A stretch of 64,000 bases of DNA from Schmidtea nova (taxonomy: Eukaryota): the NCBI GenBank assembly GCA_044892505.1, contig CM097884.1:11346001-11410000 (forward strand), read 5' to 3'. This document shows positions 22,935 to 44,326 of the stretch, piece after piece (the stretch's first letter is position 1; the number at the start of each line of letters is the position of its first letter). The notes beneath the pieces are model-generated. The model ran no database searches, was not told the origin of the DNA, and worked only from the letters and a program-made list of their open reading frames with translations. The position numbers were made by a program, and so were the translations under genes.

Positions 22935-23064
22935 TGTCACGACAATAAATAAGACACGTTTTTAAAATATGTATTTTTATCAAAAACTGCTTATTTAAAC
23001 AAAAATGTTTAAAGATGAATAAATCGATTTAGAATTAATTAGTAATTAATTCTAAATTGTCACA
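22935..23064 (-). repeat. Element B 3' LTR
   Basis: 130 bp, TGT...ACA, adjacent to the PPT. Confidence 0.9.
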
Positions 23065-23069
23065 TCCGT

Positions 23070-24400: not shown

Positions 24401-24524
24401 GACAAGTTGTTTGTATGGTCTTGACGCTCGCTTCCGGGTTTATTGTAACAGTTTCGGTTTCGGTCCTGCCTTCGTCGGCGATCAGCGCTTGTATGATTGC
24501 TTCTTCTCGGTGATGCCACTTCAG

Positions 24525-25767
24525 TTAAAGGTTTACATGAAAGGCCCGCAGTCGTTTTCTAGTTTGGCTGGTGTCTACCATATAGTTGACATCACTTATT
24601 TTGTTGACTATTCTGTATAGTCCGTGCCATCCCGATAGTATTTTTGTCGAAGATGTCGGTAAGAGGACGAGAACTTCCTTGCCTATGTCGAAAGTTGTGG
24701 TTCTTGAGTTCTTGTCATACCATTTCTTTGATGTATCTTTAGCGGCGTTGTCTCTTTGTTGTTTAATCTCCATTACTTGGTTCAGTTTATCGGTTAGGTC
24801 GAGTACAATGTATTGATTGATGTTTCTCTTTCCAGGATATTCTGCATTTGTCTATATAACATCGATAAGTGCCCTTGGACCTGGTGGCCGTACAGTAGCT
24901 CAAAGGGGCTGAATCCGATATTCTCGTGCGAACTCGACCTGTAGGCAAAGTAGAGATATAGCAAGTACGTGTCCCAATCCTTCCCTTTGGAATCGGTTAG
25001 TAATCTTCGGAATCTTCGTTGAATCTTTCACATATCAAGTTAGTTTGCGGGTGATATTTGGAGGTTTTGATGTTCGTTGTTCCTAGGAGCTGGTATACCT
25101 GTTTCATAACCTCACTCATGAAATTTGATCCTTGGTCTGTTAGAATTTCGGACGGAATACCCATTCGGCAGAAAAAATGTCACATTGCTTTTGAGACCGT
25201 TTCTGCCCTCATATCCGGTATCGCTATCACCTCTGGGTATCTGGTTGCGTGGTCTATAATTGTCAAAATAAATCTGTTTCGATCGTTTGATAAATTTAAC
25301 GGCCCCACTATATCCATGGTGACTCTGAAAAAGGGCTCGCCAATCGTGGGGGTTCTTATCAAAGGTGCTCTATGTGCTTTTTCTATTCGTCTTGATTTCT
25401 GGCACTGTGGACAGCTCTGGCACCATCCTTGGACGTCTTCTATGATGTTTGGCCAAAAGAAGAATTTTCTCAGCTTGTCTCTGGTCTTCTCATTTCCCAG
25501 ATGTCCTGATAGTGGGATTTCGTGGGCTATTTTCAGTAGTTTTTCTCGATATTGTTTGGGAATCACAGGCTTTTTTGTTGCGTTTTCTGTGTACATCAGT
25601 ATACCATTTTCTATCGACAGTTTGGTACTTTGGCATTCTTTTTTTGCTTCGTCGAAGTACTTGTACAGGAATTCGTCATCCAGTTGAGATTTGTGTAGGT
25701 TGATCATATTTATGTCGAAGATAGATTGATCATCTTCGGAGACTGTTTTCCCTTTACTTCCTTCCAT
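24525..25767 (-). pseudogene. pol: Element B integrase, located upstream of RT
   Basis: HEIPLSGHLG...CQSCPQC (HHCC), TMDIVGPL, IIDHATRYPE; GPY/F-like WHGLYRIVNKISDVNY. Confidence 0.9.
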
Positions 25768-26506: not shown

Positions 26507-28169
26507 TGTAATGTTCTGTGGACACCCGTTTGAATACAAAATTCTGACATAAATAGATGTTTATGAGTGTTTTATGTACCTCTGAAATTGTGTGAATCGG
26601 AGTTGTAAAAAGGTTGTTAGATATGTGAAAATTTTATTATTTGGTTATTTTATTGTACATTGTTTAGGATTATGTGAATTGGGGTTGTAGAAAGAATTAT
26701 TAAATATGTAAAAATTTTATTATTTGGATATTTTATTGTGCATTGTTTAAAAGAGTTTGTTAAGCGGTTAACCCGCGCAGAAATTAATAGAAATAAATAT
26801 TTAAAAGAAATTTCTTAAAATTTCTTACTAATTGATCAAATGATTTTCATTATGATAAAATTAATATATATTTTTGAATTTATCCACAGTATCTTTACAA
26901 ACAAATTGTTGCAAGCCGATATTAGACTGACAGACATCGCCAGGAATATTGAATCTGTTAATGCTACGGCAACTTATAATGTTGAATTTGTCAATATGAA
27001 GTGGAAAATAAACGTCTTTTATTTTCAAATACTTTCTAGATGTCAGGCCATTGAAAGTTTCTGCTAACGGTAAATGTTTGGAAGTGCCTATCAATTCCTA
27101 TGGATACATCACTACGGAGTCCAAGGAAGCAATGTTGGGATATTTCCGCATCAATGATAAATATGGAATCAGCAGATTAGTTGAATCGCATGATAAGCGC
27201 TATCAACCGATTTACATCGCTAACGTGCCAGTGATTATTCTGCCTGAAATCACAGAAATAGTCGCCTTAGAAATGAAAGGATTTATGGAACTATCTAAAA
27301 CTTTAAAACTAAATATTTTTAATAAACATTGCTATGCCAAAGTTGTTATTGTGCTCTACTTTTATGTCAATCTTAGTGATAACATTGAATTTGTTACTGA
27401 GAGAGAGAAATTTATAAAGATCGAAATATGTGTACAGAATATACTTCTCCGTTTAAACTTGATATTTAATCAACTCCCGTGGGAAATAAGGATCGAGTTC
27501 TCGGTAGATAACTTGCCTATTTTGACTCCAAAAATGTGCTTGAGTGACTTTAAAGGTCCCCGTTATCCGGTTTCAGTGAATAGTTATGGCAATTTGAGTT
27601 TAAGTGCCCGGGAATTGCTCGAACTTTTTAAAAGTGATTCTTCTAGTAGATGTTTTAAGTTGGAAGGCCAAATGCCGTTCACCGGTATGGTTTTAATGTT
27701 GAATGTTACTTTCTATAGATCTTTGACAATGATCGTCCAACATTATTACATCGACATTATTTTCGGATTGTTTGTATTCATTGTCTGTACAATGTGCATT
27801 TTTGAAGGTTCTTATATGATGAACTTATTAGTCTCAAGAAAATTACGATTTTATTGTCAATTGATGTCCTATCAAAATCCGAAAGTGAATGTAGTTAGAG
27901 TATGTACTGTACTATCAAATCCATGTGTGTATCATTTTTACATGGTTATTCAATCTTATGAGATCCTCCTTGGGTCATTACCCGATGGTTTCGATAGAGC
28001 TTTGGTTCGACCCGGAATCCTCCTTTCCCTGTTATCCGACAAAACTAAAGTATATTTATATTTTTTTGTAAATTTATGTAAATTAATCAGCGAGGGAACA
28101 AAAATAAAATTGATGAATCGGCAACCACGCCAAAAATCTGCATACCTTGGTGTGGTTTCCGGTTCATCA
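26507..28169 (+). repeat. Element A LTR1 (1663 bp)
   Basis: TGTAATG...CATCA, followed by ATT and the PBS; two ~80-bp direct repeats near its 5' end. Confidence 0.95.
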
Positions 28170-29582
28170 ATTTGGTGTCAGAAGTTGCTCCCTCCCTCCA
28201 GTAACATTTATATTATCCTAAATAACACTTTATTTTATTCTATTCCCACATTTATTATTTTTCCTATTCCTTCCCAAATGAAGGCGCTACAATCCTGGGC
28301 GGGACTAACTGAATTGACGGTACATGGAAACCACATCATAAGAACAACCGGGTTTTTAAACATTAAGAGGAAACAAGTATCACACAAGTTCCTCTTCCGG
28401 TGTCCTAACAAGACTTCCGGATGGCAACCTCTGTGTCCGACGAAGTCACATTTGTCCTCAATGTCTTCATTGCTCCTAGCAATTGGCGTCCCAAGGGAAA
28501 CACACCGCCACTTCTTTGTCAAGAAGTCCCAATCGGCGACACATACCCCAGTCATCACCACCTATTTCGACATTATTCCCCGTTTGACTGGAGGAATGCA
28601 AACTGATGAGGCTAACACAGACTGTGAAATCAGTCACATACAACCGCCAACACAACAAACAACACCAGTTATTACACCAATACCGTTTTTCCTAGACGGC
28701 GTTGGCTCCCCACAAAAGTGGTTCCTGGCACTAGAAGTGACTCCAACCTTTCTACCCACTCAATCTCAAGGGCAGAAGTTTGGTGCACTCTTGTCCATGC
28801 TTCCAAGCACTATTTACACCACATTGTCCACCGCCATTGCAACCGCAGCCACGGCAAGTGAGCCCTACAACTCACTGAAATCGGCAGTACTAGACGCCTA
28901 CCGACCAAAATTAGATCATTTATATGAGGCTTGGTTCCGAAATCAACCTCTCAATAATGAAAGACCAAGCGCCTTCCTCAAGCGAGCCAAGGAACAACTC
29001 GAGAGGATCCAGGCTGGTCTTACCAAAGACGACGCTCTACTCCGTAGGTTCTTTCTAAAAGCACTACCTACATCAGCACAGTCCATTCTTGCCGTTGTTC
29101 CAAACACAACATTGGAAGAACTGGCCAAAATTGCCGACAAGATCGTGGAAATCAACACGTCACCTGTTACTCCATCACCGGTAGTCGCAACAACAAGCCT
29201 CCCACAAGCCGAATTAGGAGCACTAGTCAGCGCCATAGCTGCTTTAACATCGAGGATGGACAATTTAGACGCAAGTCTACACACCCGAGGTCGAAGTCGA
29301 ACAGACAGTCGTGACAACAATCAAAAACGACATCGGTCCACATCTGCACGAGGGCTCATATGCTCCTACCATAAGACGTACGGAGACAAAGCCCAACATT
29401 GCTATGTCGGTTGTAGGTGGAACAACCGACTTCCAACATGCCTGCCTCGCAACCTTTGCATCTATCACGCAATATTTAAGACCGAGGCCAAAACATGCTT
29501 GGAAGGCTGCCGTTTCCATACTGGTAATCACAATACCAGTAACGTTAATCAAAATTCGTATAATAAGCCTTCGGAAAACTGA
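26840..29582 (+). pseudogene. gag: Copy 1 LTR-ORF/Gag fusion frame, frameshifted near 27025; Gag proper (28596-29582) is intact
   Basis: ORFs 26840-27067 and 27051-29582; ATTTT vs ATTA relative to LTR2. Confidence 0.85.
28173..28185 (+). promoter_or_regulatory. Element A PBS, tRNA-Leu type (second copy at 34818-34830)
   Basis: TGGTGTCAGAAGT is complementary to the tRNA-Leu 3' end ...ACTTCTGACACCA. Confidence 0.85.
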
Positions 29583-29679
29583 AAACGCCATCGAACTCCC
29601 CCACAGTTTTTGATGGCGATCCCATAACCTGTGGACTCTTTTCTGTTCCCGCCGTACCTCATTCCCAGAACTCTAATGA

Positions 29680-32673
29680 AGTCGATGCCCCATTCACTTC
29701 GTTATCGATAGCGGTTCCATCATCTCATTCCTACCTAATCGGTTCGGAATTGATAATAATCAAAAAAGGTCCTTCCGGACAGCCAGTGGCGAAAACTTTT
29801 CCACTATTGGAACAAAAAACTTAATATTCCAAATTCCTGGTCTATCCAAAACTTTTTCATGGACATTCCAAGTCGCCGAGGTGATTCATCCACTCTTAGG
29901 TGCCGATTTTCTTGATGCCGAAGGTTTACTCCCTGATTGCAGAGAACGCAAATTAATCCTCTCACAACACACACCTAGAGCTCAAGTTCTTGACCACCTC
30001 TGTAGCGACGCTCTCAATGTCTTACCCGCCACACCTTGCTATATACAACAATTACTAAAGACGTTCCCAAACGTCGAAAAGAGATCAAACATTCACAAAC
30101 AAACTCCCTCTTTTCTACACGTCATAGTCACCAATAACGGTATGCCTAACAGAGAACGTATGCGACCACTCGCGCCCGAGAAGCTCACACTTGTCAAGGA
30201 AGAATTCAATAAGCTACTCGAAGCCGGTACTATACACCGATCGAATTCCCCTTGGGCATCACCCATCCATGTGGTTACAAAAAAAGACGGATCTATCCGC
30301 GCCTGTGGTGACTACAGACGCCTCAACAAAGTCACTATACATGACTCTTACCCCATGCCACTTATATCAGACGTTCTTTCGAGATTACCTGAAGCTACAA
30401 TCTTCTCCACTCTAGATCTAAAAAAGGCTTACCACCAAATCCCGGTAGCACCAGAAGACATCCCGAAGACCGCTGTTATCACCCCTTTTGGCTTGTTTGA
30501 ATACAAATACATGCCATTCGGTCTCCGAAACGCAGCTCAAACGTTCCAGCGACACATTGACAATATTTTAGGAGACAAGAAATACATGGTGGCATACATC
30601 GATGACATCCTCATCGGGTCCAAAGATGCAACGGAACATCTTGAACATATCAAAGAAGTGTTCAGGTTATTGCACAATAACAATTTGCAAATTAACTTGG
30701 ACAAATGTTCCTTCTTTCAATCGGAAATAAAATTCCTTGGACACCTTGTATCGACGTCCGGAGTAAGACCACTTCCAGAACGCCTAGATACAATCCGCAA
30801 TTTTTCACGACCAAATACAGTTTCCCAAATGCGCAGCTTCTTAGGAACTGTTAATTTCTGTCACCGATTTATTCCAAGGATATCCGAGGTCACCGCACCT
30901 CTTTCCGCTCTCTGTAGCGGCCCAAAACACTCTCTCCTACCGTGGAATGACGAACTGGAAAGAGCTTTTCAATCCGTCAAGGACGCAATGTCGACAGCAC
31001 AATCTTTGTCATATATAAAGAACAATCTACCCCTATTTTTAACTACCGATGCGTCCAACATTGGCATTGCTGGAGTTCTCGAACAGAACAACACAGGGTG
31101 TCAAGAGAAAATCGAATTCTTTTCACGCAAATTAACCACACAAGAACAACGCTATTCCACGTTTGACCGCGAATTATTAGCGATTTATGAATCAGTCCGC
31201 CACTTCCGCTACTTACTCGAAGGCAGATCTTTTTCTATTCAGACGGACCATAAACCGCTAGTTCACATGATGGAAATGAAGACCCCTTCACCAAGACAGG
31301 GACGTCAAATCAGCTACCTATCAGAATTCGCGTTCACTATCACCCATCTCCCAGGTCGCCAGAATATTGTAGCAGATTATCTATCGCGAAATCTTGTTGC
31401 AACGATCACTACTGAGCCGATCTTCACTGACGACGTTCTCAGGTCTCTACCACCTTCCCCAAAAGACCTGTCATTCTTCAAAAATACAACGGTTTTCGAT
31501 AAAGGCATCTACTACGACAACGCCTTATCTGGAAATATCCGCCCAATTTTGCAAGAAAAGTTAAGGCGCGAAGCTTTCAACCACACCCACAACCTTCACC
31601 ATCCGGGCACGTCTGCAACATACAATCTACTACGTTCTCGTGTCATTTGGCCAAGTATGAGACAAGACGTAAAAGACTGGTGTGAATCTTGCTTAGGATG
31701 CCAACAACACAAAATCCACCGACATACTCGACCACCCTTACATAACTTTCCAATGGGAAACCGTTTTGAAGTGGTGCATGTCGATCTAGTTGGACCTCTT
31801 CCTCCAGACAACGGTTACACACATATATTAACCATGCTGGACAGAAAAACTCGTTTTCCAGTCGCTGTTCCTTTAAAATCCATTTCTGCCTATATTGTAG
31901 CATCGGCGATCATAGAACATTGGATCTCGATATTTGGTGTTCCTCTACATTTCATTACCGATCAAGGACCCCAATTCGAATCCCATCTTTTTAAACAACT
32001 TTCGACACAACTAGGAATTAAACACCTGAGGACTAGTACCTACCACCCACAAACAAACGGAGCTGTCGAGCGGTTTCACCGCACACTCAAGACATCCCTC
32101 CGAATACTTTCTACTTCAAAGAACTGGACAAAGGCCCTACCTTTTGTTCTACTAGGATGGCGCAATGCGCCATCAAAAACAACAGGTTCGTCTCCAGCTC
32201 AACTACTGTTCGGTACTAACGTCATGTTACCAAACGAACTTGTCGAGCTAAACGGCGAACCAACTTTAGAAAATCTAGCGGATGCAAGAAACCATTTCCT
32301 ATCTTTGGACTCAAATCCAAATTTTTCAATGTCAAACACTTACAAACCATATATTCCAAGATCTTTTGATCGCGCAACTCATGTATGGATCCGCTCAATT
32401 GCCGATATCGGCCTAAAACCACGCTACGAAGGACCGTATTCCCTTCTCCAAATACTTGATAACGGCACTGCAAAAGTTTCCATTAATGGAATGGATACAA
32501 TTATAAATCTAGCCCGTCTCAAGCCAGCTTTTGGTTATATGGAAGAAGACCCCAGTCCTACAAATATCACATCGCATGCTGAGACACAAGACTTTACACC
32601 ACCAAATCCTCAAGACCCCATACAAACCCATAATCTGCAGAGGGATAACCCGACCGTCGTTCGCTTACCTTAG
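29680..32673 (+). CDS. pol: Element A copy 1 pol (PR-RT-RH-INT)
   Basis: FVIDSGS, YIDD, LTTDASN, HVDLVGP, ITDQGPQF, VERFHR; frame open from 29680. Confidence 0.95.
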   Translation, partial: SRCPIHFVIDSGSIISFLPNRFGIDNNQKRSFRTASGENFSTIGTKNLIFQIPGLSKTFSWTFQVAEVIHPLLGADFLDAEGLLPDCRERKLILSQHTPRAQVLDHLCSDALNVLPATPCYIQQLLKTFPNVEKRSNIHKQTPSFLHVIVTNNGMPNRERMRPLAPEKLTLVKEEFNKLLEAGTIHRSNSPWASPIHVVTKKDGSIRACGDYRRLNKVTIHDSYPMPLISDVLSRLPEATIFSTLDLKKAYHQIPVAPEDIPKTAVITPFGLFEYKYMPFGLRNAAQTFQRHIDNILGDKKYMVAYIDDILIGSKDATEHLEHIKEVFRLLHNNNLQINLDKCSFFQSEIKFLGHLVSTSGVRPLPERLDTIRNFSRPNTVSQMRSFLGTVNFCHRFIPRISEVTAPLSALCSGPKHSLLPWNDELERAFQSVKDAMSTAQSLSYIKNNLPLFLTTDASNIGIAGVLEQNNTGCQEKIEFFSRKLTTQEQRYSTFDRELLAIYESVRHFRYLLEGRSFSIQTDHKPLVHMMEMKTPSPRQGRQISYLSEFAFTITHLPGRQNIVADYLSRNLVATITTEPIFTDDVLRSLPPSPKDLSFFKNTTVFDKGIYYDNALSGNIRPILQEKLRREAFNHTHNLHHPGTSATYNLLRSRVIWPSMRQDVKDWCESCLGCQQHKIHRHTRPPLHNFPMGNRFEVVHVDLVGPLPPDNGYTHILTMLDRKTRFPVAVPLKSISAYIVASAIIEHWISIFGVPLHFITDQGPQFESHLFKQLSTQLGIKHLRTSTYHPQTNGAVERFHRTLKTSLRILSTSKNWTKALPFVLLGWRNAPSKTTGSSPAQLLFGTNVMLPNELVELNGEPTLENLADARNHFLSLDSNPNFSMSNTYKPYIPRSFDRATHVWIRSIADIGLKPRYEGPYSLLQILDNGTAKVSINGMDTIINLARLKPAFGYMEEDPSPTNITSHAETQDFTPPNPQDPIQTHNLQRDNPTVVRLP

Positions 32674-33080
32674 CAATTTTTATCATCACCGAAATTACTT
32701 CCAATCAAAAATGAAATCACTCCATCCCTCATAACTAATCACCCCACCACTCAGTTACAAATCGAAAACACATCAAACAGCACATTACAACCAATAGCTA
32801 ACCAGAAGCAAATACCAATACAGAGAACAACACAATCATCGCAACCAGATAACACATGGTTTATCCCGGCAACTATATTGGATCAGCAAACTCAATCAAC
32901 TCCTACTTCAAAATATACTCTGAAACCCATCCTAAAATCATCGAATAAGATACCCAAGGCACAACAAATTAAGAAAGTGCGTATAGCAGAATGGCACCGA
33001 ACTAAAAGAATCGGCGAAAACCCAAACTTACCAATCCGCCTATCTAGAACTAACGACTTGTAACCTAGGGCGGGCACCAA

Positions 33081-33120
33081 TACTAACACTTCTAAAATCT
33101 TTTTTTTGTTTTCTTTTAAG
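33081..33120 (+). promoter_or_regulatory. Splice acceptor upstream of PPT/LTR (second copy at 39726-39765)
   Basis: TACTAAC branch point, T-rich tract, first downstream AG at 33119-33120. Confidence 0.7.
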
Positions 33121-33152
33121 AAAAACGCTCCGCGTTACTGGATGGGGGGTAA

Positions 33153-34814
33153 TGTAATGTTCTGTGGACACCCGTTTGAATACAAAATTCTGACATAAAT
33201 AGATGTTTATGAGTGTTTTATGTACCTCTGAAATTGTGTGAATCGGAGTTGTAAAAAGGTTGTTAGATATGTGAAAATTTTATTATTTGGTTATTTTATT
33301 GTACATTGTTTAGGATTATGTGAATTGGGGTTGTAGAAAGAATTATTAAATATGTAAAAATTTTATTATTTGGATATTTTATTGTGCATTGTTTAAAAGA
33401 GTTTGTTAAGCGGTTAACCCGCGCAGAAATTAATAGAAATAAATATTTAAAAGAAATTTCTTAAAATTTCTTACTAATTGATCAAATGATTTTCATTATG
33501 ATAAAATTAATATATATTTTTGAATTTATCCACAGTATCTTTACAAACAAATTGTTGCAAGCCGATATTAGACTGACAGACATCGCCAGGAATATTGAAT
33601 CTGTTAATGCTACGGCAACTTATAATGTTGAATTTGTCAATATGAAGTGGAAAATAAACGTCTTTTATTACAAATACTTTCTAGATGTCAGACCATTGAA
33701 AGTTTCTGCTAACGGTAAATGTTTGGAAGTGCCTATCAATTCCTATGGATACATCACTACGGAGTCCAAGGAAGCAATGTTGGGATATTTCCGCATCAAT
33801 GATAAATATGGAATCAGCAGATTAGTTGAATCGCATGATAAGCGCTATCAACCGATTTACATCGCTAACGTGCCAGTGATTATTCTGCCTGAAATCACAG
33901 AAATAGTCGCCTTAGAAATGAAAGGATTTATGGAACTATCTAAAACTTTAAAACTAAATATTTTTAATAAACATTGCTATGCCAAAGTTGTTATTGTGCT
34001 CTACTTTTATGTCAATCTTAGTGATAACATTGAATTTGTTACTGAGAGAGAGAAATTTATAAAGATCGAAATATGTGTACAGAATATACTTCTCCGTTTA
34101 AACTTGATATTTAATCAACTCCCGTGGGAAATAAGGATCGAGTTCTCGGTAGATAACTTGCCTATTTTGACTCCAAAAATGTGCTTGAGTGACTTTAAAG
34201 GTCCCCGTTATCCGGTTTCAGTGAATAGTTATGGCAATTTGAGTTTAAGTGCCCGGGAATTGCTCGAACTTTTTAAAAGTGATTCTTCTAGTAGATGTTT
34301 TAAGTTGGAAGGCCAAATGCCGTTCACCGGTATGGTTTTAATGTTGAATGTTACTTTCTATAGATCTTTGACAATGATCGTCCAACATTATTACATCGAC
34401 ATTATTTTCGGATTGTTTGTATTCATTGTCTGTACAATGTGCATTTTTGAAGGTTCTTATATGATGAACTTATTAGTCTCAAGAAAATTACGATTTTATT
34501 GTCAATTGATGTCCTATCAAAATCCGAAAGTGAATGTAGTTAGAGTATGTACTGTACTATCAAATCCATGTGTGTATCATTTTTACATGGTTATTCAATC
34601 TTATGAGATCCTCCTTGGGTCATTACCCGATGGTTTCGATAGAGCTTTGGTTCGACCCGGAATCCTCCTTTCCCTGTTATCCGACAAAACTAAAGTATAT
34701 TTATATTTTTTTGTAAATTTATGTAAATTAATCAGCGAGGGAACAAAAATAAAATTGATGAATCGGCAACCACGCCAAAAATCTGCATACCTTGGTGTGG
34801 TTTCCGGTTCATCA
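33153..34814 (+). repeat. Element A LTR2 (shared central LTR, 1662 bp)
   Basis: Preceded by the PPT and followed by the PBS. Confidence 0.95.
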
Positions 34815-36227
34815 ATTTGGTGTCAGAAGTTGCTCCCTCCCTCCAGTAACATTTATATTATCCTAAATAACACTTTATTTTATTCTATTCCCACATTTAT
34901 TATTTTTCCTATTCCTTCCCAAATGAAGGCGCTACAATCCTGGGCGGGACTAACTGAATTGACGGTACATGGAAACCACATCATAAGAACAACCGGGTTT
35001 TTAAACATTAAGAGGAAACAAGTATCACACAAGTTCCTCTTCCGGTGTCCTAACAAGACTTCCGGATGGCAACCTCTGTGTCCGACGAAGTCACATTTGT
35101 CCTCAATGTCTTCATTGCTCCTAGCAATTGGCGTCCCAAGGGAAACACACCGCCACTTCTTTGTCAAGAAGTCCCAATCGGCGACACATACCCCAGTCAT
35201 CACCACCTATTTCGACATTATTCCCCGTTTGACTGGAGGAATGCAAACTGATGAGGCTAACACAGACTGTGAAATCAGTCACATACAACCGCCAACACAA
35301 CAAACAACACCAGTTATTACACCAATACCGTTTTTCCTAGACGGCGTTGGCTCCCCACAAAAGTGGTTCCTGGCACTAGAAGTGACTCCAACCTTTCTAC
35401 CCACTCAATCTCAAGGGCAGAAGTTTGGTGCACTCTTGTCCATGCTTCCAAGCACTATTTACACCACATTGTCCACCGCCATTGCAACCGCAGTCACGGC
35501 AAGTGAGCCCTACAACTCACTGAAATCGGCAGTACTAGACGCCTACCGACCAAAATTAGATCATTTATATGAGGCTTGGTTCCGAAATCAACCTCTCAAT
35601 AATGAAAGACCAAGCGCCTTCCTCAAGCGAGCCAAGGAACAACTCGAGAGGATCCAGGCTGGTCTTACCAAAGACGACGCTCTACTCCGTAGGTTCTTTC
35701 TAAAAGCACTACCTACATCAGCACAGTCCATTCTTGCCGTTGTTCCAAACACAACATTGGAAGAACTGGCCAAAATTGCCGACAAGATCGTGGAAATCAA
35801 CACGTCACCTGTTACTCCATCACCGGTAGTCGCAACAACAAGCCTCCCACAAGCCGAATTAGGAGCACTAGTCAGCGCCATAGCTGCTTTAACATCGAGG
35901 ATGGACAATTTAGACGCAAGTCTACACACCCGAGGTCGAAGTCGAACAGACAGTCGTGACAACAATCAAAAACGACATCGGTCCACATCTGCACGAGGGC
36001 TCATATGCTCCTACCATAAGACGTACGGAGACAAAGCCCAACATTGCTATGTCGGTTGTAGGTGGAACAACCGACTTCCAACATGCCTGCCTCGCAACCT
36101 TTGCATCTATCACGCAATATTTAAGACCGAGGCCAAAACATGCTTGGAAGGCTGCCGTTTCCATACTGGTAATCACAATACCAGTAACGTTAATCAAAAT
36201 TCGTATAATAAGCCTTCGGAAAACTGA
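33486..36227 (+). CDS. gag: Copy 2 uninterrupted 913-aa ORF: LTR-encoded protein (aa 1-443) + leader + Gag (ATG 35241)
   Basis: Single open frame; Gag motifs FFLDGVGSPQKWFLALE, LRRFFLKALP, and two CHCC motifs CSYHKTYGDKAQHCYVGC and CIYHAIFKTEAKTCLEGC. Confidence 0.85.
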   Translation: MIFIMIKLIYIFEFIHSIFTNKLLQADIRLTDIARNIESVNATATYNVEFVNMKWKINVFYYKYFLDVRPLKVSANGKCLEVPINSYGYITTESKEAMLGYFRINDKYGISRLVESHDKRYQPIYIANVPVIILPEITEIVALEMKGFMELSKTLKLNIFNKHCYAKVVIVLYFYVNLSDNIEFVTEREKFIKIEICVQNILLRLNLIFNQLPWEIRIEFSVDNLPILTPKMCLSDFKGPRYPVSVNSYGNLSLSARELLELFKSDSSSRCFKLEGQMPFTGMVLMLNVTFYRSLTMIVQHYYIDIIFGLFVFIVCTMCIFEGSYMMNLLVSRKLRFYCQLMSYQNPKVNVVRVCTVLSNPCVYHFYMVIQSYEILLGSLPDGFDRALVRPGILLSLLSDKTKVYLYFFVNLCKLISEGTKIKLMNRQPRQKSAYLGVVSGSSIWCQKLLPPSSNIYIILNNTLFYSIPTFIIFPIPSQMKALQSWAGLTELTVHGNHIIRTTGFLNIKRKQVSHKFLFRCPNKTSGWQPLCPTKSHLSSMSSLLLAIGVPRETHRHFFVKKSQSATHTPVITTYFDIIPRLTGGMQTDEANTDCEISHIQPPTQQTTPVITPIPFFLDGVGSPQKWFLALEVTPTFLPTQSQGQKFGALLSMLPSTIYTTLSTAIATAVTASEPYNSLKSAVLDAYRPKLDHLYEAWFRNQPLNNERPSAFLKRAKEQLERIQAGLTKDDALLRRFFLKALPTSAQSILAVVPNTTLEELAKIADKIVEINTSPVTPSPVVATTSLPQAELGALVSAIAALTSRMDNLDASLHTRGRSRTDSRDNNQKRHRSTSARGLICSYHKTYGDKAQHCYVGCRWNNRLPTCLPRNLCIYHAIFKTEAKTCLEGCRFHTGNHNTSNVNQNSYNKPSEN

Positions 36228-36324
36228 AAACGCCATCGAACTCCCCCACAGTTTTTGATGGCGATCCCATAACCTGTGGACTCTTTTCTGTTCCCGCCGT
36301 ACCTCATTCCCAGAACTCTAATGA

Positions 36325-39318
36325 AGTCGATGCCCCATTCACTTCGTTATCGATAGCGGTTCCATCATCTCATTCCTACCTAATCGGTTCGGAATTGATA
36401 ATAATCAAAAAAGGTCCTTCCGGACAGCCAGTGGCGAAAACTTTTCCACTATTGGAACAAAAAACTTAATATTCCAAATTCCTGGTCTATCCAAAACTTT
36501 TTCATGGACATTCCAAGTCGCCGAGGTGATTCATCCACTCTTAGGTGCCGATTTTCTTGATGCCGAAGGTTTACTCCCTGATTGCAGAGAACGCAAATTA
36601 ATCCTCTCACAACACACACCTAGAGCTCAAGTTCTTGACCACCTCTGTAGCGACGCTCTCAATGTCTTACCCGCCACACCTTGCTATATACAACAATTAC
36701 TAAAGACGTTCCCAAACGTCGAAAAGAGATCAAACATTCACAAACAAACTCCCTCTTTTCTACACGTCATAGTCACCAATAACGGTATGCCTAACAGAGA
36801 ACGTATGCGACCACTCGCGCCCGAGAAGCTCACACTTGTCAAGGAAGAATTCAATAAGCTACTCGAAGCCGGTACTATACACCGATCGAATTCCCCTTGG
36901 GCATCACCCATCCATGTGGTTACAAAAAAAGACGGATCTATCCGCGCCTGTGGTGACTACAGACGCCTCAACAAAGTCACTATACATGACTCTTACCCCA
37001 TGCCACTTATATCAGACGTTCTTTCGAGATTACCTGAAGCTACAATCTTCTCCACTCTAGATCTAAAAAAGGCTTACCACCAAATCCCGGTAGCACCAGA
37101 AGACATCCCGAAGACCGCTGTTATCACCCCTTTTGGCTTGTTTGAATACAAATACATGCCATTCGGTCTCCGAAACGCAGCTCAAACGTTCCAGCGACAC
37201 ATTGACAATATTTTAGGAGACAAGAAATACATGGTGGCATACATCGATGACATCCTCATCGGGTCCAAAGATGCAACGGAACATCTTGAACATATCAAAG
37301 AAGTGTTCAGGTTATTGCACAATAACAATTTGCAAATTAACTTGGACAAATGTTCCTTCTTTCAATCGGAAATAAAATTCCTTGGACACCTTGTATCGAC
37401 GTCCGGAGTAAGACCACTTCCAGAACGCCTAGATACAATCCGCAATTTTTCACGACCAAATACAGTTTCCCAAATGCGCAGCTTCTTAGGAACTGTTAAT
37501 TTCTGTCACCGATTTATTCCAAGGATATCCGAGGTCACCGTACCTCTTTCCGCTCTCTGTAGCGGCCCAAAACACTCTCTCCTACCGTGGAATGACGAAC
37601 TGGAAAGAGCTTTTCAATCCGTCAAGGACGCAATGTCGACAGCACAATCTTTGTCATATATAAAGAACAATCTACCCCTATTTTTAACTACCGATGCGTC
37701 CAACATTGGCATTGCTGGAGTTCTCGAACAGAACAACACAGGGTGTCAAGAGAAAATCGAATTCTTTTCACGCAAATTAACCACACAAGAACAACGCTAT
37801 TCCACGTTTGACCGCGAATTATTAGCGATTTATGAATCAGTCCGCCACTTCCGCTACTTACTCGAAGGCAGATCTTTTTCTATTCAGACGGACCATAAAC
37901 CGCTAGTTCACATGATGGAAATGAAGACCCCTTCACCAAGACAGGGACGTCAAATCAGCTACCTATCAGAATTCGCGTTCACTATCACCCATCTCCCAGG
38001 TCGCCAGAATATTGTAGCAGATTATCTATCGCGAAATCTTGTTGCAACGATCACTACTGAGCCGATCTTCACTGACGACGTTCTCAGGTCTCTACCACCT
38101 TCCCCAAAAGACCTGTCATTCTTCCAAAATACAACGGTTTTCGATAAAGGCATCTACTACGACAACGCCTTATCTGGAAATATCCGCCCAATTTTGCAAG
38201 AAAAGTTAAGGCGCGAAGCTTTCAACCACACCCACAACCTTCACCATCCGGGCACGTCTGCAACATACAATCTACTACGTTCTCGTGTCATTTGGCCAAG
38301 TATGAGACAAGACGTAAAAGACTGGTGTGAATCTTGCTTAGGATGCCAACAACACAAAATCCACCGACATACTCGACCACCCTTACATAACTTTCCAACG
38401 GGAAACCGTTTTGAAGTGGTGCATGTCGATCTAGTTGGACCTCTTCCTCCAGACAACGGTTACACACATATATTAACCATGCTGGACAGAAAAACTCGTT
38501 TTCCAGTCGCTGTTCCTTTAAAATCCATTTCTGCCTATATTGTAGCATCGGCGATCATAGAACATTGGATCTCGATATTTGGTGTTCCTCTACATTTCAT
38601 TACCGATCAAGGACCCCAATTCGAATCCCATCTTTTTAAACAACTTTCGACACAACTAGGAATTAAACACCTGAGGACTAGTACCTACCACCCACAAACA
38701 AACGGAGCTGTCGAGCGGTTTCGCCGCACACTCAAGACATCCCTCCGAATACTTTCTACTTCAAAGAACTGGACAAAGGCCCTACCTTTTGTTCTACTAG
38801 GATGGCGCAATGCGCCATCAAAAACAACAGGTTCGTCTCCAGCTCAACTACTGTTCGGTACTAACGTCATGTTACCAAACGAACTTGTCGAGCTAAACGG
38901 CGAACCAACTTTAGAAAATCTAGCGGATGCAAGAAACCATTTCCTATCTTTGGACTCAAATCCAAATTTTTCAATGTCAAACACTTACAAACCATATATT
39001 CCAAGATCTTTTGATCGCGCAACTCATGTATGGATCCGCTCAATTGCCGATATCGGCCTAAAACCACGCTACGAAGGACCGTATTCCCTTCTCCAAATAC
39101 TTGATAACGGCACTGCAAAAGTTTCCATTAATGGAATGGATACAATTATAAATCTAGCCCGTCTCAAGCCAGCTTTTGGTTATATGGAAGAAGACCCCAG
39201 TCCTACAAATATCACATCGCATGCTGAGACACAAGACTTTACACCACCAAATCCTCAAGACCCCATACAAACCCATAATCTGCAGAGGGATAACCCGACC
39301 GTCGTTCGCTTACCTTAG
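36325..39318 (+). CDS. pol: Element A copy 2 pol (PR-RT-RH-INT)
   Basis: As copy 1, with at least four amino-acid differences. Confidence 0.95.
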   Translation, partial: SRCPIHFVIDSGSIISFLPNRFGIDNNQKRSFRTASGENFSTIGTKNLIFQIPGLSKTFSWTFQVAEVIHPLLGADFLDAEGLLPDCRERKLILSQHTPRAQVLDHLCSDALNVLPATPCYIQQLLKTFPNVEKRSNIHKQTPSFLHVIVTNNGMPNRERMRPLAPEKLTLVKEEFNKLLEAGTIHRSNSPWASPIHVVTKKDGSIRACGDYRRLNKVTIHDSYPMPLISDVLSRLPEATIFSTLDLKKAYHQIPVAPEDIPKTAVITPFGLFEYKYMPFGLRNAAQTFQRHIDNILGDKKYMVAYIDDILIGSKDATEHLEHIKEVFRLLHNNNLQINLDKCSFFQSEIKFLGHLVSTSGVRPLPERLDTIRNFSRPNTVSQMRSFLGTVNFCHRFIPRISEVTVPLSALCSGPKHSLLPWNDELERAFQSVKDAMSTAQSLSYIKNNLPLFLTTDASNIGIAGVLEQNNTGCQEKIEFFSRKLTTQEQRYSTFDRELLAIYESVRHFRYLLEGRSFSIQTDHKPLVHMMEMKTPSPRQGRQISYLSEFAFTITHLPGRQNIVADYLSRNLVATITTEPIFTDDVLRSLPPSPKDLSFFQNTTVFDKGIYYDNALSGNIRPILQEKLRREAFNHTHNLHHPGTSATYNLLRSRVIWPSMRQDVKDWCESCLGCQQHKIHRHTRPPLHNFPTGNRFEVVHVDLVGPLPPDNGYTHILTMLDRKTRFPVAVPLKSISAYIVASAIIEHWISIFGVPLHFITDQGPQFESHLFKQLSTQLGIKHLRTSTYHPQTNGAVERFRRTLKTSLRILSTSKNWTKALPFVLLGWRNAPSKTTGSSPAQLLFGTNVMLPNELVELNGEPTLENLADARNHFLSLDSNPNFSMSNTYKPYIPRSFDRATHVWIRSIADIGLKPRYEGPYSLLQILDNGTAKVSINGMDTIINLARLKPAFGYMEEDPSPTNITSHAETQDFTPPNPQDPIQTHNLQRDNPTVVRLP

Positions 39319-39797
39319 CAATTTTTATCATCACCGAAATTACTTCCAATCAAAAATGAAATCACTCCATCCCTCATAACTAATCACCCCACCACTCAGT
39401 TACAAATCGAAATTACATCAAACAGCACATTACAACCAATAGCTAACCAGAAGCAAATACCAATACAGAGAACAACACAATCATCGCAACCAGATAACAC
39501 ATGGTTTATCCCGGCAACTATATTGGATCAGCAAACTCAATCAACTCCTACTTCAAAATATACTCTGAAACCCATCCTAAAATCATCGAATAAGATACCC
39601 AAGGCACAACAAATTAAGAAAGTGCGTATAGCAGAATGGCACCGAACTAAAAGAATCGGCGAAAACCCAAACTTACCAATCCGCCTATCTAGAACTAACG
39701 ACTTGTAACCTAGGGCGGGCACCAATACTAACACTTCTAAAATCTTTTTTTTGTTTTCTTTTAAGAAAAACGCTCCGCGTTACTGGATGGGGGGTAA

Positions 39798-41460
39798 TGT
39801 AATGTTCTGTGGACACCCGTTTGAATACAAAATTCTGACATAAATAGATGTTTATGAGTGTTTTATGTACCTCTGAAATTGTGTGAATCGGAGTTGTAAA
39901 AAGGTTGTTAGATATGTGAAAATTTTATTATTTGGTTATTTTATTGTACATTGTTTAGGATTATGTGAATTGGGGTTGTAGAAAGAATTATTAAATATGT
40001 AAAAATTTTATTATTTGGATATTTTATTGTGCATTGTTTAAAAGAGTTTGTTAAGCGGTTAACCCGCGCAGAAATTAATAGAAATAAATATTTAAAAGAA
40101 ATTTCTTAAAATTTCTTACTAATTGATCAAATGATTTTCATTATGATAAAATTAATATATATTTTTGAATTTATCCACAGTATCTTTACAAACAAATTGT
40201 TGCAAGCCGATATTAGACTGACAGACATCGCCAGGAATATTGAATCTGTTAATGCTACGGCAACTTATAATGTTGAATTTGTCAATATGAAGTGGAAAAT
40301 AAACGTCTTTTATTTTCAAATACTTTCTAGATGTCAGGCCATTGAAAGTTTCTGCTAACGGTAAATGTTTGGAAGTGCCTATCAATTCCTATGGATACAT
40401 CACTACGGAGTCCAAGGAAGCAATGTTGGGATATTTCCGCATCAATGATAAATATGGAATCAGCAGATTAGTTGAATCGCATGATAAGCGCTATCAACCG
40501 ATTTACATCGCTAACGTGCCAGTGATTATTCTGCCTGAAATCACAGAAATAGTCGCCTTAGAAATGAAAGGATTTATGGAACTATCTAAAACTTTAAAAC
40601 TAAATATTTTTAATAAACATTGCTATGCCAAAGTTGTTATTGTGCTCTACTTTTATGTCAATCTTAGTGATAACATTGAATTTGTTACTGAGAGAGAGAA
40701 ATTTATAAAGATCGAAATATGTGTACAGAATATACTTCTCCGTTTAAACTTGATATTTAATCAACTCCCGTGGGAAATAAGGATCGAGTTCTCGGTAGAT
40801 AACTTGCCTATTTTGACTCCAAAAATGTGCTTGAGTGACTTTAAAGGTCCCCGTTATCCGGTTTCAGTGAATAGTTATGGCAATTTGAGTTTAAGTGCCC
40901 GGGAATTGCTCGAACTTTTTAAAAGTGATTCTTCTAGTAGATGTTTTAAGTTGGAAGGCCAAATGCCGTTCACCGGTATGGTTTTAATGTTGAATGTTAC
41001 TTTCTATAGATCTTTGACAATGATCGTCCAACATTATTACATCGACATTTTTTTCGGATTGTTTGTATTCATTGTCTGTACAATGTGCATTTTTGAAGGT
41101 TCTTATATGATGAACTTATTAGTCTCAAGAAAATTACGATTTTATTGTCAATTGATGTCCTATCAAAATCCGAAAGTGAATGTAGTTAGAGTATGTACTG
41201 TACTATCAAATCCATGTGTGTATCATTTTTACATGGTTATTCAATCTTATGAGATCCTCCTTGGGTCATTACCCGATGGTTTCGATAGAGCTTTGGTTCG
41301 ACCCGGAATCCTCCTTTCCCTGTTATCCGACAAAACTAAAGTATATTCATATTTTTTTGTAAATTTATGTAAATTAATCAGCGAGGGAACAAAAATAAAA
41401 TTGATGAATCGGCAACCACGCCAAAAATCTGCATACCTTGGTGTGGTTTCCGGTTCATCA
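39798..41460 (+). repeat. Element A LTR3 (1663 bp)
   Basis: Preceded by the PPT and followed by AA plus the TSD. Confidence 0.95.
40131..41460 (+). pseudogene. LTR3 copy of the LTR-encoded ORF (same frameshift as LTR1)
   Basis: ORFs 40131-40358 and 40342-41520. Confidence 0.8.
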
Positions 41461-41462
41461 AA

Positions 41463-42090
41463 CCTTGCTTTAAACCATCTTTCGATCTCTACGTTCAATC
41501 GGTTGAGCCATTCGGCGTGACTCTCGTTATTAGCTTTTCACGAGGACCTGAAAGCTTTTCTGTGTTCTTCTGGGGATATGTTGAATCTTTACATAATGGT
41601 GCCTTTTATCTCCTCGTAGTTTCTTGATTCTTCTGTCTATAGTTTTAACATGGCTTCCAGGGCTTTACCTGAAAGTAACGGTTCAATGAAAGCATACCAT
41701 TCTGTCTTTGGGATTTCTTGAATTGTCGCCCATCTCTCGAATCCTTCTAGGTAGACTTCGATCCTTTCTGTACAATTATATGGCAACAGCTTTGGAATCT
41801 GTGGGCTTTGTTGTATGCAGCGTTGACTCTCTCTTCTGTTTGTTGGCAATGATTTCTTTTCCTCGATCTCTAGCTTCTTCAATTCGAGTTGAAATGCTTC
41901 ATGACGTCGTCTTCTGTCTTCCAGTTCGTCTAGTCTTTTCCTCTTTTCTGTTTCGGCTTTCTTTTCTTCTCTATCTTCTTGTCTTCTTTTTTTCTCTTAA
42001 TTCATCTTGTCGTCTTTTTTCTTCTAATTCGTCTTGTCGTCTTTTTTCTTCTAATTGGAGTCTTCGTATCTCCGCTTCGTTTTTTTTGCT
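41463..42090 (-). pseudogene. gag: Element B gag N-terminal part
   Basis: EKR-rich coil, IEVYLEGFERWA...LLSGKALEA; rejoins 26506 in frame as WFKARDAKEMQD once A and one TSD copy are removed. Confidence 0.85.
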
Positions 42091-42101
42091 AGTGACGCCA
42101 T

Positions 42102-42231
42102 TGTTACGACAATAAATAAGACACGTTTTTAAAATATGTATTTTTATGAAAAACTGCTTATTTAAACAAAAATGTTTAAAGATGAATAAATCGATTTAGA
42201 ATTAATTCGTAATTAATTCTAAATTGTCACA
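42102..42231 (-). repeat. Element B 5' LTR
   Basis: 130 bp, matches 22935-23064, adjacent to the PBS. Confidence 0.9.
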
Positions 42232-42599
42232 CTCGGGTTTCCCATTAGCTCGGGTTTCCCATTAGCTCGAGTTTCCCACTAGCTCGGGTTTCCCATTAGC
42301 TCGGGTTTCCTATAGAGTAATTAATTATTTTAATTAATTTTTATTTTCTAAATATTTCTTTTTATTTTAATTAATTTGTATTTTCTAAATACCCCTTTTT
42401 ATTTTTATATACCCATATTCGAATTTGTCTCATCATTTGGAATCTTCCCATACCAGTTTCCCCCTCTCAAACTTTATTTTGATTTTTTATAAATTTTTAA
42501 TTAATGTTTACATATTAATTATTATTTTTCCAATTTTCGTATTTTTATTGATTTGTGCAATTTAATATTTATTTTCTGTAAATTTTAACAACCATAACA
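42232..42599 (-). repeat. Element C 5' LTR, distal half (17-bp GCTCGGGTTTCCCATTA minisatellite at 42232-42312)
   Basis: The minisatellite continues across the B insertion; the terminus TGTTATGG pairs with AACA at the other end. Confidence 0.55.
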
Positions 42600-42890
42600 G
42601 TTGTAGACGTCGCAAATCGATCGATTTAATACCCGATCTGGCGGAGGGGCTCGCAAAATAAAACCGCGGACAAATTTTTGCACGAACCGAATACTTTGAT
42701 ACTGTGGTGACATTATTGTATTAATTTTGCTGTGCTTGTTGATATTTTAAATGGATCCTTGCATGAATTGTAGTGCTTTGATGTTGAAATTATCCATTTT
42801 TATGTAGTAATAAATTCTTATCTATGTAAATTGTTGATTTAAGTTCGCTAGTTAGGATCTCAATGAATGTTTAAAGAAAAATTGTTGAAC

Positions 42891-43118
42891 AAGGGACAAA
42901 ATGGGCATCAAACATCCTATCGGTAGCCTTTGGACCCAGGAGATGTTCGGTCAATCATAGTTTCGAATTTTCGATGCTCACTGATTGCGAATATCCACCC
43001 ATTTGTTGCATTACCAACGTTACATTGTGACGGGCAACAAGATGGTTAAACTAATGTTTTGTATGTTGATGTGAGCCATTACAATGTCAAGGTCATATTG
43101 ACGATCAACAACACACCA
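42891..43118 (+). repeat. ~235-bp dispersed repeat, copy b
   Basis: Direct match to 14448-14684. Confidence 0.9.
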
Positions 43119-43446
43119 GTAATTAGTTTTCGCATATTGCTAATGCTGGTGTGTTGGTTGGTTGTTCAACAGAGATCATATGTGATTTTATATGTTAGGG
43201 TGATCTCGCCAACAAAAAAACATCTCCCCGCTGACACCCATGATGTATCCCTAACTACTCATCATGTTGGTGCTGTGTCAACGTTGTGAAATGACAAGGC
43301 AGGTGAGCAACCTTGCGGCTACTATTCCCTTGTTTATTCGCGGGTCCATCACTACCGATAGAAGGTTTATGTGGATTTGTTTCGGTCCCTATTTTATGCG
43401 CTCCTTTAACTTTTTTAGAATAACCCAATTTTGGATGCCTGTAGCA

Positions 43447-44203: not shown

Positions 44204-44326
44204 CGCCCCCCCTTTATTAGCGATCACATCATACAAAATCACAACAAGGCTATTCTACAAATTTATTTATTCACAACAAAAATTCCAATCGCATCATTTC
44301 TCATATCCCGACGAAGACATTCTTTC

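What the first reader, a model, noticed from the sequence alone, without database searches (positions are those of the whole stretch)
33486..34814. A ~440-codon protein encoded inside a 1.66-kb LTR
Seen: a sense ORF fills about 80% of the LTR despite the AT-rich composition. It has an internal duplication (F....W.I ... G....V.INSYGYI vs F....W.I ... G....V.VNSYGNL, offset ~162 aa), four N-x-S/T sequons, a hydrophobic segment IIFGLFVFIVCTMCIF (aa ~305-321) and a hydrophobic N-terminus. Known: sense ORFs in U3 occur in some retroviruses (MMTV sag, lentiviral nef) but are not a standard feature of CsRn1-clade Gypsy elements. Inference: a type I membrane or surface protein, possibly a novel env-like or immune-modulating factor. 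Caveat: AT-rich frames are hydrophobic by chance, so the signal peptide is the weakest part.
Basis: partly seen in the sequence, partly recalled or inferred. Interest (0 to 1): 0.85.

Follow-up and report, generated by a model that had tools for sequence, protein, structure and literature searches.

The report
Host ADAM gene fragment inside retrotransposon LTR
The long reading frame in this retrotransposon's terminal repeat is a catalytically dead piece of a host ADAM10-like membrane protease that the element picked up, and it runs without a stop into the element's own gag gene, so it may be made as a membrane-anchored extension of Gag.

Summary
The ORF is real: 0 stops in 443 codons against 25-41 in the other five frames, and the longest open run in 2000 shuffles was 183 codons. 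It does not end in the LTR. It continues through the primer-binding site and leader into gag, giving 913 codons (33486-36227).

It is not an orphan. Codons 1-273 match the N-terminus of four ADAM10-like M12B metalloproteases (best E 1e-98, 56-59% identity), starting at the homologue's own Met. Codons 274-327 match their stalk and transmembrane helix. About 304 residues between are absent, in frame: the rest of the catalytic domain with the zinc site, the disintegrin domain and the Cys-rich domain.

The element is a CsRn1-clade Gypsy with two CHCC gag motifs. It stands as a tandem LTR-int-LTR-int-LTR array, 99.8% identical.

The 258 linker codons between the ADAM piece and the probable gag Met carry 0 stops against 12.6 expected, but show no codon-usage signal.

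Only the middle LTR has the whole ORF in one frame. The outer two each carry one frameshift.

The internal duplication is not supported. A self-contained sag/nef-like or env-like gene is not supported.

Best reading: a transduced host gene fragment, possibly translated as a type I membrane extension of Gag. Translation is untested.

The parts
26507..41461 (+). Tandem array LTR1 - internal 1 - LTR2 - internal 2 - LTR3 of one CsRn1-clade Gypsy element, repeat period 6645/6646 bp
   Evidence: Self-BLAST gives 99.8% identity over 8310 bp and three repeat copies. The near-identical 5-base flanks CCTTG on both sides suggest a single insertion.
33153..34814 (+). LTR2, the middle LTR: 3' LTR of copy 1 and 5' LTR of copy 2. 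1662 bp, TG...CA ends
33153..33485 (+). LTR head, 26% GC, U3-like. It has 6-12 stops in every frame. It holds an 83-bp-spaced direct repeat (33260-33312 and 33343-33395, 91% identical) and an AT-rich TATA/AATAAA-like stretch at 33434-33459
33486..36227 (+). The whole open frame, 913 codons: ADAM-derived part, LTR tail, PBS and leader, gag
33486..34304 (+). ADAM-derived N-terminal part (aa 1-273): hydrophobic signal-like start, pro-region, and about the first half of the M12B catalytic domain (from about aa 163). The homologue's own Met aligns at 33498
   Evidence: phmmer E 1.6e-98 to P0001; tblastn 33498-34280 = P0004 aa 1-261; alignment A2; Pfam domain bounds on P0002
34305..34466 (+). ADAM-derived stalk and transmembrane helix (aa 274-327). 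It follows an in-frame absence of about 304 residues: the zinc site, the disintegrin domain and the Cys-rich domain
   Evidence: tblastn 34281-34466 = P0001 aa 552-613; alignment A2; the ADAM10 8esv alignment reaches the stalk and TM; hydropathy peak
34467..34814 (+). LTR tail (aa 328-443). It has no similarity to ADAM tails or to anything else. It has 0 stops in the ORF frame against 4-14 in the other frames
34752..34818 (+). Strong hairpin at the end of the LTR, abutting the PBS and directly after an AATAAA at 34748
   Evidence: 27-nt arms, 89% complementary; -37.8 kcal/mol, z -7.6
34818..34833 (+). Primer-binding-site-like sequence starting with TGG, lying inside the open frame
34815..35240 (+). 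PBS and leader (aa 444-585). It has 0 stops in the ORF frame against 4-12 in the other frames, no codon-usage signal, and D+E of 2%
35241..36227 (+). gag proper, from the probable native Met586. It has a DUF7041 match and two CHCC zinc knuckles (aa 841 and 873 of the ORF)
36325..39318 (+). pol open frame, 997 codons: PR (DSG), RT (YIDD), RNase H, integrase. It does not overlap the gag frame
26840..28169 (+). The same ADAM-derived gene in LTR1. It carries one frameshift relative to LTR2; the rest is open into gag of copy 1
40131..41460 (+). The same ADAM-derived gene in LTR3. It carries one frameshift relative to LTR2, and the frame runs out into flanking DNA

Best explanation
A CsRn1-clade Gypsy LTR retrotransposon has transduced part of a host ADAM10-like (M12B) metalloprotease mRNA into its LTR.

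Shown:
- The captured piece keeps the gene's own start codon, the hydrophobic signal-like N-terminus, the pro-region, about half of the catalytic domain, and the membrane-proximal stalk with the transmembrane helix.
- It lacks, in frame, the zinc-binding site, the disintegrin domain and the Cys-rich domain. It cannot be a protease.
- It is uninterrupted across what is a multi-domain protein.
- It has no stop inside the LTR. It stays open through the LTR tail, the primer-binding site and the leader into gag.

Inferred:
- It came from a spliced message, possibly an exon-skipped one or one shortened by template switching.
- The insert lies downstream of the LTR's transcription start, in R/U5. The 333-bp repeat-bearing head would then be U3.
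- The genomic RNA of a copy with an intact frame would therefore start with the ADAM AUG and encode one 913-residue type I membrane protein. The ADAM remnant would face the lumen or outside, there would be one membrane pass, and Gag would be the cytoplasmic domain.
- The fragment is most likely a tolerated passenger that persists because being in frame with gag still allows Gag to be made. A gain such as membrane tethering of Gag is possible but unproven.
For: Homology:
- phmmer against 1.84 billion representatives gave three hits: P0001 (E 1.6e-98, 56% identity), P0002 (E 1e-18) and P0003 (E 1e-11). A fourth, P0004, scored E 1e-96.
- All four carry Pfam Reprolysin domains, and two also a weak, below-cut-off Disintegrin match.
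- Their profile matches ADAM10 best (8esv, E 1.3e-32), from the zinc site through the disintegrin and Cys-rich regions to the stalk and TM.
- tblastn maps 33498-34280 to P0004 aa 1-261 and 34281-34466 to P0001 aa 552-613. Alignment A2 shows a single clean gap.
- There is no HExxH in the ORF or in any frame of the LTR.

Host origin:
- The insert has 33% GC, against 44-47% in gag and pol.
- P0004 seems to run into a second, similar N-terminus, judged by eye only, which would suggest tandem cellular paralogues.

Constraint:
- 33 of 42 family-invariant positions are kept.
- There are no stops in 443 codons.

Fusion with gag:
- The 258 linker codons carry 0 stops, against 12.6 +/- 3.2 in shuffles. 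None of 5000 shuffles had 0, and the Poisson P is 3e-6.
- There is no in-frame stop anywhere in the LTR.
- The gag of a 40%-related element in the window starts at the conserved block. That places the native gag Met at 35241, so the linker was probably once leader.
- There is no ATG in the roughly 130 bases before 33486.
Against: - No transcript, start-site, poly(A)-site or peptide data exist here, so U3 versus R/U5 is inferred only from the open frame.
- The linker has no codon-usage signal and an unprotein-like composition, with D+E of 2-4%.
- It is hard to see how a dozen stops could be removed stepwise by selection.
- A -37.8 kcal/mol hairpin lies inside the frame.
- Two of the three LTR copies have a frameshift in the N-terminal part, so the signal-like start is in frame only in LTR2.
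- The window lineage has about twice as many unique changes as its sisters and has lost 2 of 4 invariant cysteines. This suggests relaxed constraint.
- The copies differ by too few changes for dN/dS: 1 synonymous and 3 non-synonymous.
- No other copy, no parental gene and no insert-free relative of the LTR could be found.
- The structure model was unusable, with pLDDT 38.8.
Confidence: 0.6

Rival explanations
1. Dead passenger. The ADAM fragment was captured recently, is not translated as part of Gag or at all, and is decaying. The ADAM part is open because it is young. The linker is open because part of it is itself coding-derived (an unrecognised tail exon, or a native N-terminal extension of gag) and the rest is open by luck.
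For: - Two of the three LTRs are frameshifted.
- The lineage shows an accelerated rate and has lost invariant cysteines.
- The linker has no codon-usage signal.
- Substitutions among the copies are 3 non-synonymous to 1 synonymous in the LTR and 5 to 0 in gag and pol, as under drift.
- If native gag began at an upstream Met such as 34923, only about 36 codons would need to be open by chance.
Against: - Zero stops in 258 linker codons has P about 3e-6 if the region is non-coding. Even the 142 PBS/leader codons alone have 0 stops against 5-8 in the other plus-strand frames.
- 79% of family-invariant residues are kept.
- The related element's gag starts at the conserved block, not far upstream.
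Confidence: 0.3
2. One reading: a self-contained accessory gene in U3, in the manner of MMTV sag or lentiviral nef. It would be translated from the 3' LTR or a subgenomic RNA as a novel env-like or immune-modulating surface protein.
For: It is a sense ORF filling 80% of the LTR with a type I membrane layout and four sequons. ADAM pro-regions are known from the literature on ADAM10/17 to inhibit their cognate enzymes (own knowledge), so a modulating role is conceivable.
Against: - There is no stop codon in the LTR. From a 3' LTR the message would be non-stop, or would end in flanking DNA, as the LTR3 frame does.
- The frame is joined to gag.
- The protein is not novel. It is a truncated ADAM.
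- It has no similarity to any fusion or envelope protein.
- PMC2582038 reports no env-like protein in CsRn1-like elements.
Confidence: 0.07
3. Assembly artefact. The tandem array, or the one-base difference that makes LTR2 the only intact copy, would be a product of assembly or homopolymer miscalling. The true state of all the LTRs would then be the same, either all intact or all shifted.
For: The length difference lies in a short run of one base: 4 in the longer copies and 3 in LTR2. The array copies are 99.8% identical.
Against: The copies also differ by 4 LTR substitutions and 7 internal substitutions, so they are not simple duplicates of one read set. A run of 3-4 bases is short for a homopolymer error. 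In any case this rival does not touch the ADAM homology.
Confidence: 0.15

Closest known systems
ADAM10 / Kuzbanian-type M12B metalloprotease-disintegrins (nearest solved: human ADAM10, 8esv, 6bdz, 6be6)
   Same: The N-terminal 273 residues and the stalk with the transmembrane helix are homologous to four ADAM10-like proteins. The topology is the same: signal-like start, ectodomain and a single pass. Two or three of the sequons are conserved.
   Different: It lacks the HExxH zinc site, the Met-turn region, the disintegrin domain, the Cys-rich domain and the family's conserved cytoplasmic tail. It sits in a retrotransposon LTR and is fused in frame to gag.
Gene-fragment transduction by LTR retroelements (maize Bs1; at least 189 independent captures in maize LTR retrotransposons, PMC2774510) and oncogene capture by retroviruses
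   Same: An intron-free piece of a cellular gene is carried inside a retroelement and copied along with it.
   Different: The insert is in the LTR, so it is present twice per element. It keeps the donor's start codon and lies upstream of gag and in frame with it. The host is an animal with a CsRn1-clade Gypsy element. The full-text searches turned up no comparable case.
   Same: Sense coding sequence occupies LTR sequence.
   Different: Those are self-terminated genes in U3, read from spliced RNAs (own knowledge). This ORF has no stop in the LTR and continues into gag. No sequence likeness was found.
N-terminally extended, membrane-inserted Gag (glyco-Gag of murine gammaretroviruses), and Ty1, whose gag ORF starts in the 5' LTR so that the PBS is translated (own knowledge)
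   Same: What it would work like: an upstream start adds a membrane-targeting extension to Gag, and coding sequence runs through U5 and the PBS.
   Different: Here the extension is a captured host ectodomain plus a TM helix with type I topology. Neither comparison was tested here. No homology is implied.

Membership tests
M12B (ADAM/reprolysin) metalloprotease | Zinc-binding HExxHxxGxxH(D) motif and Met-turn in the catalytic domain | tested here: not met
   There is no HExxH in the 913-aa ORF or in any of the six frames of the LTR. Alignment A2 shows this region absent, while all four homologues have it.
M12B (ADAM/reprolysin) metalloprotease | Sequence homology to family members | tested here: met
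   E 1.6e-98, 1e-96, 1e-18 and 1e-11 to proteins that carry Pfam Reprolysin domains. The window ORF itself has no Pfam hit.
ADAM (a disintegrin and metalloprotease) | Disintegrin and Cys-rich domains between the catalytic domain and the membrane | tested here: not met
   Both lie in the roughly 304-residue gap.
ADAM (a disintegrin and metalloprotease) | Type I layout: N-terminal signal, single TM helix near the C-terminus | tested here: met
   Hydropathy peaks at aa 1-20 and 297-325. Both are aligned to the homologues' N-terminus and TM. No signal-peptide predictor was available.
CsRn1 clade of Ty3/Gypsy | Gag CHCC motif C-x2-H-x9-C-x3-C in place of CCHC (PMC2582038) | tested here: met
   There are two exact matches, at aa 841 and 873 of the ORF, and no CCHC.
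CsRn1 clade of Ty3/Gypsy | tRNA-Trp primer-binding site (PMC2582038) | not testable with these tools
   A TGG-starting PBS-like sequence is present at 34818-34833. No tRNA-Trp sequence was at hand, and the window has no tRNA gene.
CsRn1 clade of Ty3/Gypsy | PR-RT-RH-IN order, no env, placement by RT phylogeny | tested here: inconclusive
   The domain order is confirmed by Pfam and motifs, and there is no env ORF between pol and the LTR. No phylogeny was made.
LTR retrotransposon | Identical direct LTRs with TG...CA ends, PPT, PBS and target-site duplication | tested here: met
   The duplication, CCTTG, is offset by two bases on the right side.
U3 accessory gene of the sag/nef kind | Self-contained ORF with its own stop, lying in U3 of the 3' LTR | tested here: not met
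   There is no stop in the LTR, and the frame continues into gag or into flanking DNA. The U3/R/U5 bounds cannot be located from sequence alone.
Retroelement envelope protein | Similarity to a known fusion glycoprotein class | tested here: not met
   Pfam and PDB sequence searches of the ORF found nothing of the kind. The structure model was too poor (pLDDT 38.8) for a fold search.

The most novel reading that the evidence does not exclude
The element has turned a stolen host membrane-protein scaffold into a working part of itself. The ADAM signal sequence and transmembrane helix would anchor Gag to membranes as a type I protein, with a host-derived, protease-dead ADAM pro-region displayed on the other side. 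This could be a first step towards an envelope-like or budding function. It could also act as a decoy that interferes with the host's own ADAM10-like sheddase. Such a thing has not been described for an LTR retrotransposon.
Probability: 0.15. Interest if true: 0.85.

Novelty: new variant of a known kind. Interest (0 to 1): 0.6.

Why it matters
Capture of cellular genes is how retroviruses acquired oncogenes, and probably how retroelements acquired envelope genes. Clear, young examples in invertebrate LTR retrotransposons are scarce.

This case has unusual features:
- The captured piece sits in the LTR, so it is copied twice per element.
- It keeps the donor's start codon, signal-like sequence and membrane anchor.
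- It stays in frame with gag across the primer-binding site.

If it is translated, it would show how a retrotransposon could gain membrane targeting in one step.

If it is not translated, it is still a dated, traceable example of LTR-mediated exon shuffling of an ADAM gene. It is also a warning for gene annotation in this genome, because LTR copies will look like truncated ADAM genes.

Tried and rejected
- **Homologue search, 443-aa ORF alone:** nothing found, because of the length window. The representative search and the region search then found P0001-P0004.
- **Homologue search, LTR tail + leader + gag (586 aa):** nothing.
- **Exact-protein look-ups:** P0001, P0002, P0004 and the window ORF are not on record, so no genomic context or organism could be obtained for the homologues. 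The cluster look-up gave only UniParc ids.
- **Metagenome scan with the ORF:** no relative.
- **Pfam and PDB sequence searches of the ORF itself:** no significant hit.
- **AlphaFold2 with the 5-row alignment:** mean pLDDT 38.8, so no fold search was run.
- **Internal duplication:** rejected.
- **Chance ORF in AT-rich DNA:** rejected.
- **Insert-free LTR, solo LTR or parental ADAM gene in the window:** none.
- **Rfam on the LTR and leader:** only sub-threshold chance matches.
- **Codon-usage frame test on the linker:** no signal, and the test is weak at this length.
- **dN/dS among copies:** impossible, with only 4 substitutions.
- **Host organism:** not identified. The flanks are 25-30% GC and TE-rich, and the window has no tRNA gene.
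- **Literature searches for an ORF in an LTR or for ADAM capture:** nothing comparable.

Full report
**1. What is there**

The window holds a tandem array of one LTR retrotransposon on the + strand:
- LTR1, 26507-28170
- internal region 1
- LTR2, 33153-34814/5
- internal region 2
- LTR3, 39798-41461

The copies are 99.8% identical. Each LTR starts with TG and ends with CA. A purine tract precedes each LTR, and a TGG-starting primer-binding-site-like sequence follows it. The array as a whole is flanked by CCTTG on both sides, offset by two bases on the right. This fits one insertion followed by LTR-LTR recombination.

The internal region encodes:
- gag, with a DUF7041 match and two C-x2-H-x9-C-x3-C motifs;
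- a 997-codon pol frame with PR (DSG), RT (YIDD), RNase H and integrase.

The gag and pol open frames do not overlap, and this is so in both copies. I cannot tell whether that is an unusual expression strategy or a shared lesion.

**2. The observation**

The ORF starting at 33486 is real and far beyond chance:
- It has 0 stops in 443 codons, against 25-41 in each of the other five frames.
- The longest open run in 2000 dinucleotide-preserving shuffles of the LTR was 183 codons, against 450 observed.

The frame continues through the PBS and leader into gag and ends at 36227, giving 913 codons.

The four sequons and the two hydrophobic segments are present.

The proposed internal duplication is not supported:
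- Pairwise BLASTP gives E 0.015.
- Profile-profile comparison over the five-sequence alignment gives probability 0.1-0.2%.
- The second motif is not conserved as such in the relatives.

**3. What it is**

A full HMMER scan of 1.84 billion representatives found three relatives. A region search added a fourth. P0001 and P0004 are 56-59% identical to ORF residues 1-273. P0002 and P0003 are 24-30% identical.

All four carry Pfam Reprolysin (M12B) domains, and two also have a weak, below-cut-off Disintegrin match. A profile of the alignment matches solved ADAM10 best (8esv, E 1.3e-32). That match runs from the zinc site through the disintegrin and Cys-rich regions to the stalk and transmembrane helix.

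tblastn and alignment A2 show the following:
- 33498-34280 corresponds to P0004 residues 1-261, starting at the homologue's own Met.
- 34281-34466 corresponds to P0001 residues 552-613, the stalk and TM helix.
- About 304 residues between the two are absent, in frame.

By the Pfam bounds on P0002, the catalytic domain begins near ORF residue 163. About half of it is therefore kept, and the zinc site is gone. No HExxH occurs in the ORF or in any frame of the LTR.

The hydrophobic N-terminus is conserved in P0004.

The last 116 codons in the LTR (34467-34814) resemble nothing. In particular they do not resemble the cytoplasmic tail that P0001, P0003 and P0004 share.

The insert has 33% GC, between the 25-30% of the flanks and the 44-47% of gag and pol. 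P0004 also seems to run into a second, similar N-terminus. I judged this by eye only. It would suggest tandem cellular paralogues.

I conclude that the LTR carries a transduced, internally deleted, intron-free fragment of a host ADAM10-like gene.

**4. Is it under constraint?**

For constraint:
- The window ORF keeps 33 of 42 positions that are invariant in the four relatives. At other positions its identity to P0001 is 54%.

Against constraint:
- It has lost 2 of 4 invariant cysteines.
- Its lineage has about twice as many unique changes as P0001 or P0004: 24-27 against 11-15, p 0.009-0.11.

The three LTRs differ by four substitutions, 1 synonymous and 3 non-synonymous. They also differ by one single-base length difference in a short run of one base. 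That is too little for dN/dS.

Because of the length difference, only LTR2 has the whole ORF in one frame. LTR1 and LTR3 each carry one frameshift in the N-terminal part. Since the LTR2 frame matches the homologues throughout, it is the ancestral coding state.

**5. The link to gag**

Between the end of ADAM similarity (34466) and Met586 (35241) lie 258 codons with no stop. Shuffles give 12.6 +/- 3.2 stops, none of 5000 shuffles had zero, and the Poisson P is 3e-6. The other frames have 4-14 stops per segment.

A degraded element at 52.5-56.4 kb is 40% identical in pol. Its gag ATG lies right at the conserved gag block. This places the native gag start of the array element at Met586, so the linker was probably once leader.

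Against this, the linker has no codon-usage signal in the ORF frame. It has only 2-4% acidic residues. It also contains a very stable hairpin (34752-34818, -37.8 kcal/mol, z -7.6) next to the PBS.

The open frame argues that the insert lies in the transcribed part of the 5' LTR (R/U5) and is read through into gag. The 333-bp head would then be U3. It holds an 83-bp-spaced direct repeat and AT-rich TATA-like sequence, and has no ATG in the last 130 bases or so. This is inference. No expression data were available.

**6. Mechanism, with likelihoods**

- Capture of a host ADAM10-like message into the LTR: about 0.85.
- Loss of protease function: certain, from the sequence.
- Translation as a single type I membrane protein with Gag as the cytoplasmic domain, in copies whose frame is intact: about 0.4.
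- A selected function for the ADAM remnant, such as membrane tethering of Gag or interference with the host enzyme: about 0.15.

The main rival is a young, untranslated passenger. In that case part of the linker would be unrecognised coding sequence and the rest open by luck.

- there is no stop in the LTR;
- the frame is joined to gag;
- the protein is a truncated ADAM.

**7. Comparison with what is known**

Gene-fragment capture by LTR retrotransposons is well known in plants. PMC2774510 reports 425 maize elements from at least 189 captures, and cites Bs1. Capture by retroviruses is classical.

What is unusual here:
- the position of the insert inside the LTR;
- retention of the donor's start, signal-like sequence and TM helix;
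- the frame shared with gag.

I found no report of such a case.

Two functional analogies, glyco-Gag and the Ty1 gag start in the LTR, come from my own knowledge. They were not tested.

**8. Limits**

- The host organism is unknown.
- The homologues carry only UniParc ids, with no context.
- No other copy of the element could be reached.
- The structure model was unusable.

- The tblastn table printed, and the repeat table, show match bounds that bracket the frameshift in LTR1 and LTR3. An earlier count gave the ORF bounds in those LTRs. I state no change that would undo the shift.
The domain boundary given above rests.

The N runs were left alone.

Noticed in passing
window 18453-20459 (-): A 668-aa ORF whose last 80 residues or so match the start of Pfam PF24664, the viral fusion glycoprotein of Monjiviricetes (E 2.9e-7). 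It lies among Gypsy-like gag, RT, RNase H and integrase fragments on the minus strand at 21-26 kb. It may be an env-like gene of a neighbouring, broken retroelement.
   Followed up: no
window 23052-25767 (-) and 41500-45000 (-): The array is inserted into older retroelement debris. On the minus strand an integrase piece comes before an RT-RNase H piece, so at least two nested or rearranged elements are present.
   Followed up: partly
window 52487-56419 (+): A degraded relative of the array element: pol 33-40% identical, gag 24%. It is split into several ORFs, and no LTRs were detected. I used it only to place the native gag start.
   Followed up: partly
window 34752-34818 (+): A 27-bp-stem hairpin (-37.8 kcal/mol, z -7.6) at the very end of the LTR. 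It comes directly after an AATAAA and touches the PBS. It is probably a U5/PBS structural element, and it lies inside the open frame.
   Followed up: partly
window 36227-36325 (+), and the same in copy 1: The gag and pol open frames do not overlap. A third frame is open across the gap. This is either an unusual expression strategy or a lesion shared by both copies.
   Followed up: partly
window 59136-59505: A tandem array with a 15-bp period next to an N run (59584-59720). There are other short tandem repeats at 60953-61249 and 63527-63887.
   Followed up: no
P0004 (987 aa), C-terminal part: The homologue's gene model seems to continue past its ADAM tail into a second stretch resembling an ADAM N-terminus, judged by eye only. 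This would suggest tandem paralogues fused by the gene predictor in the source genome.
   Followed up: no
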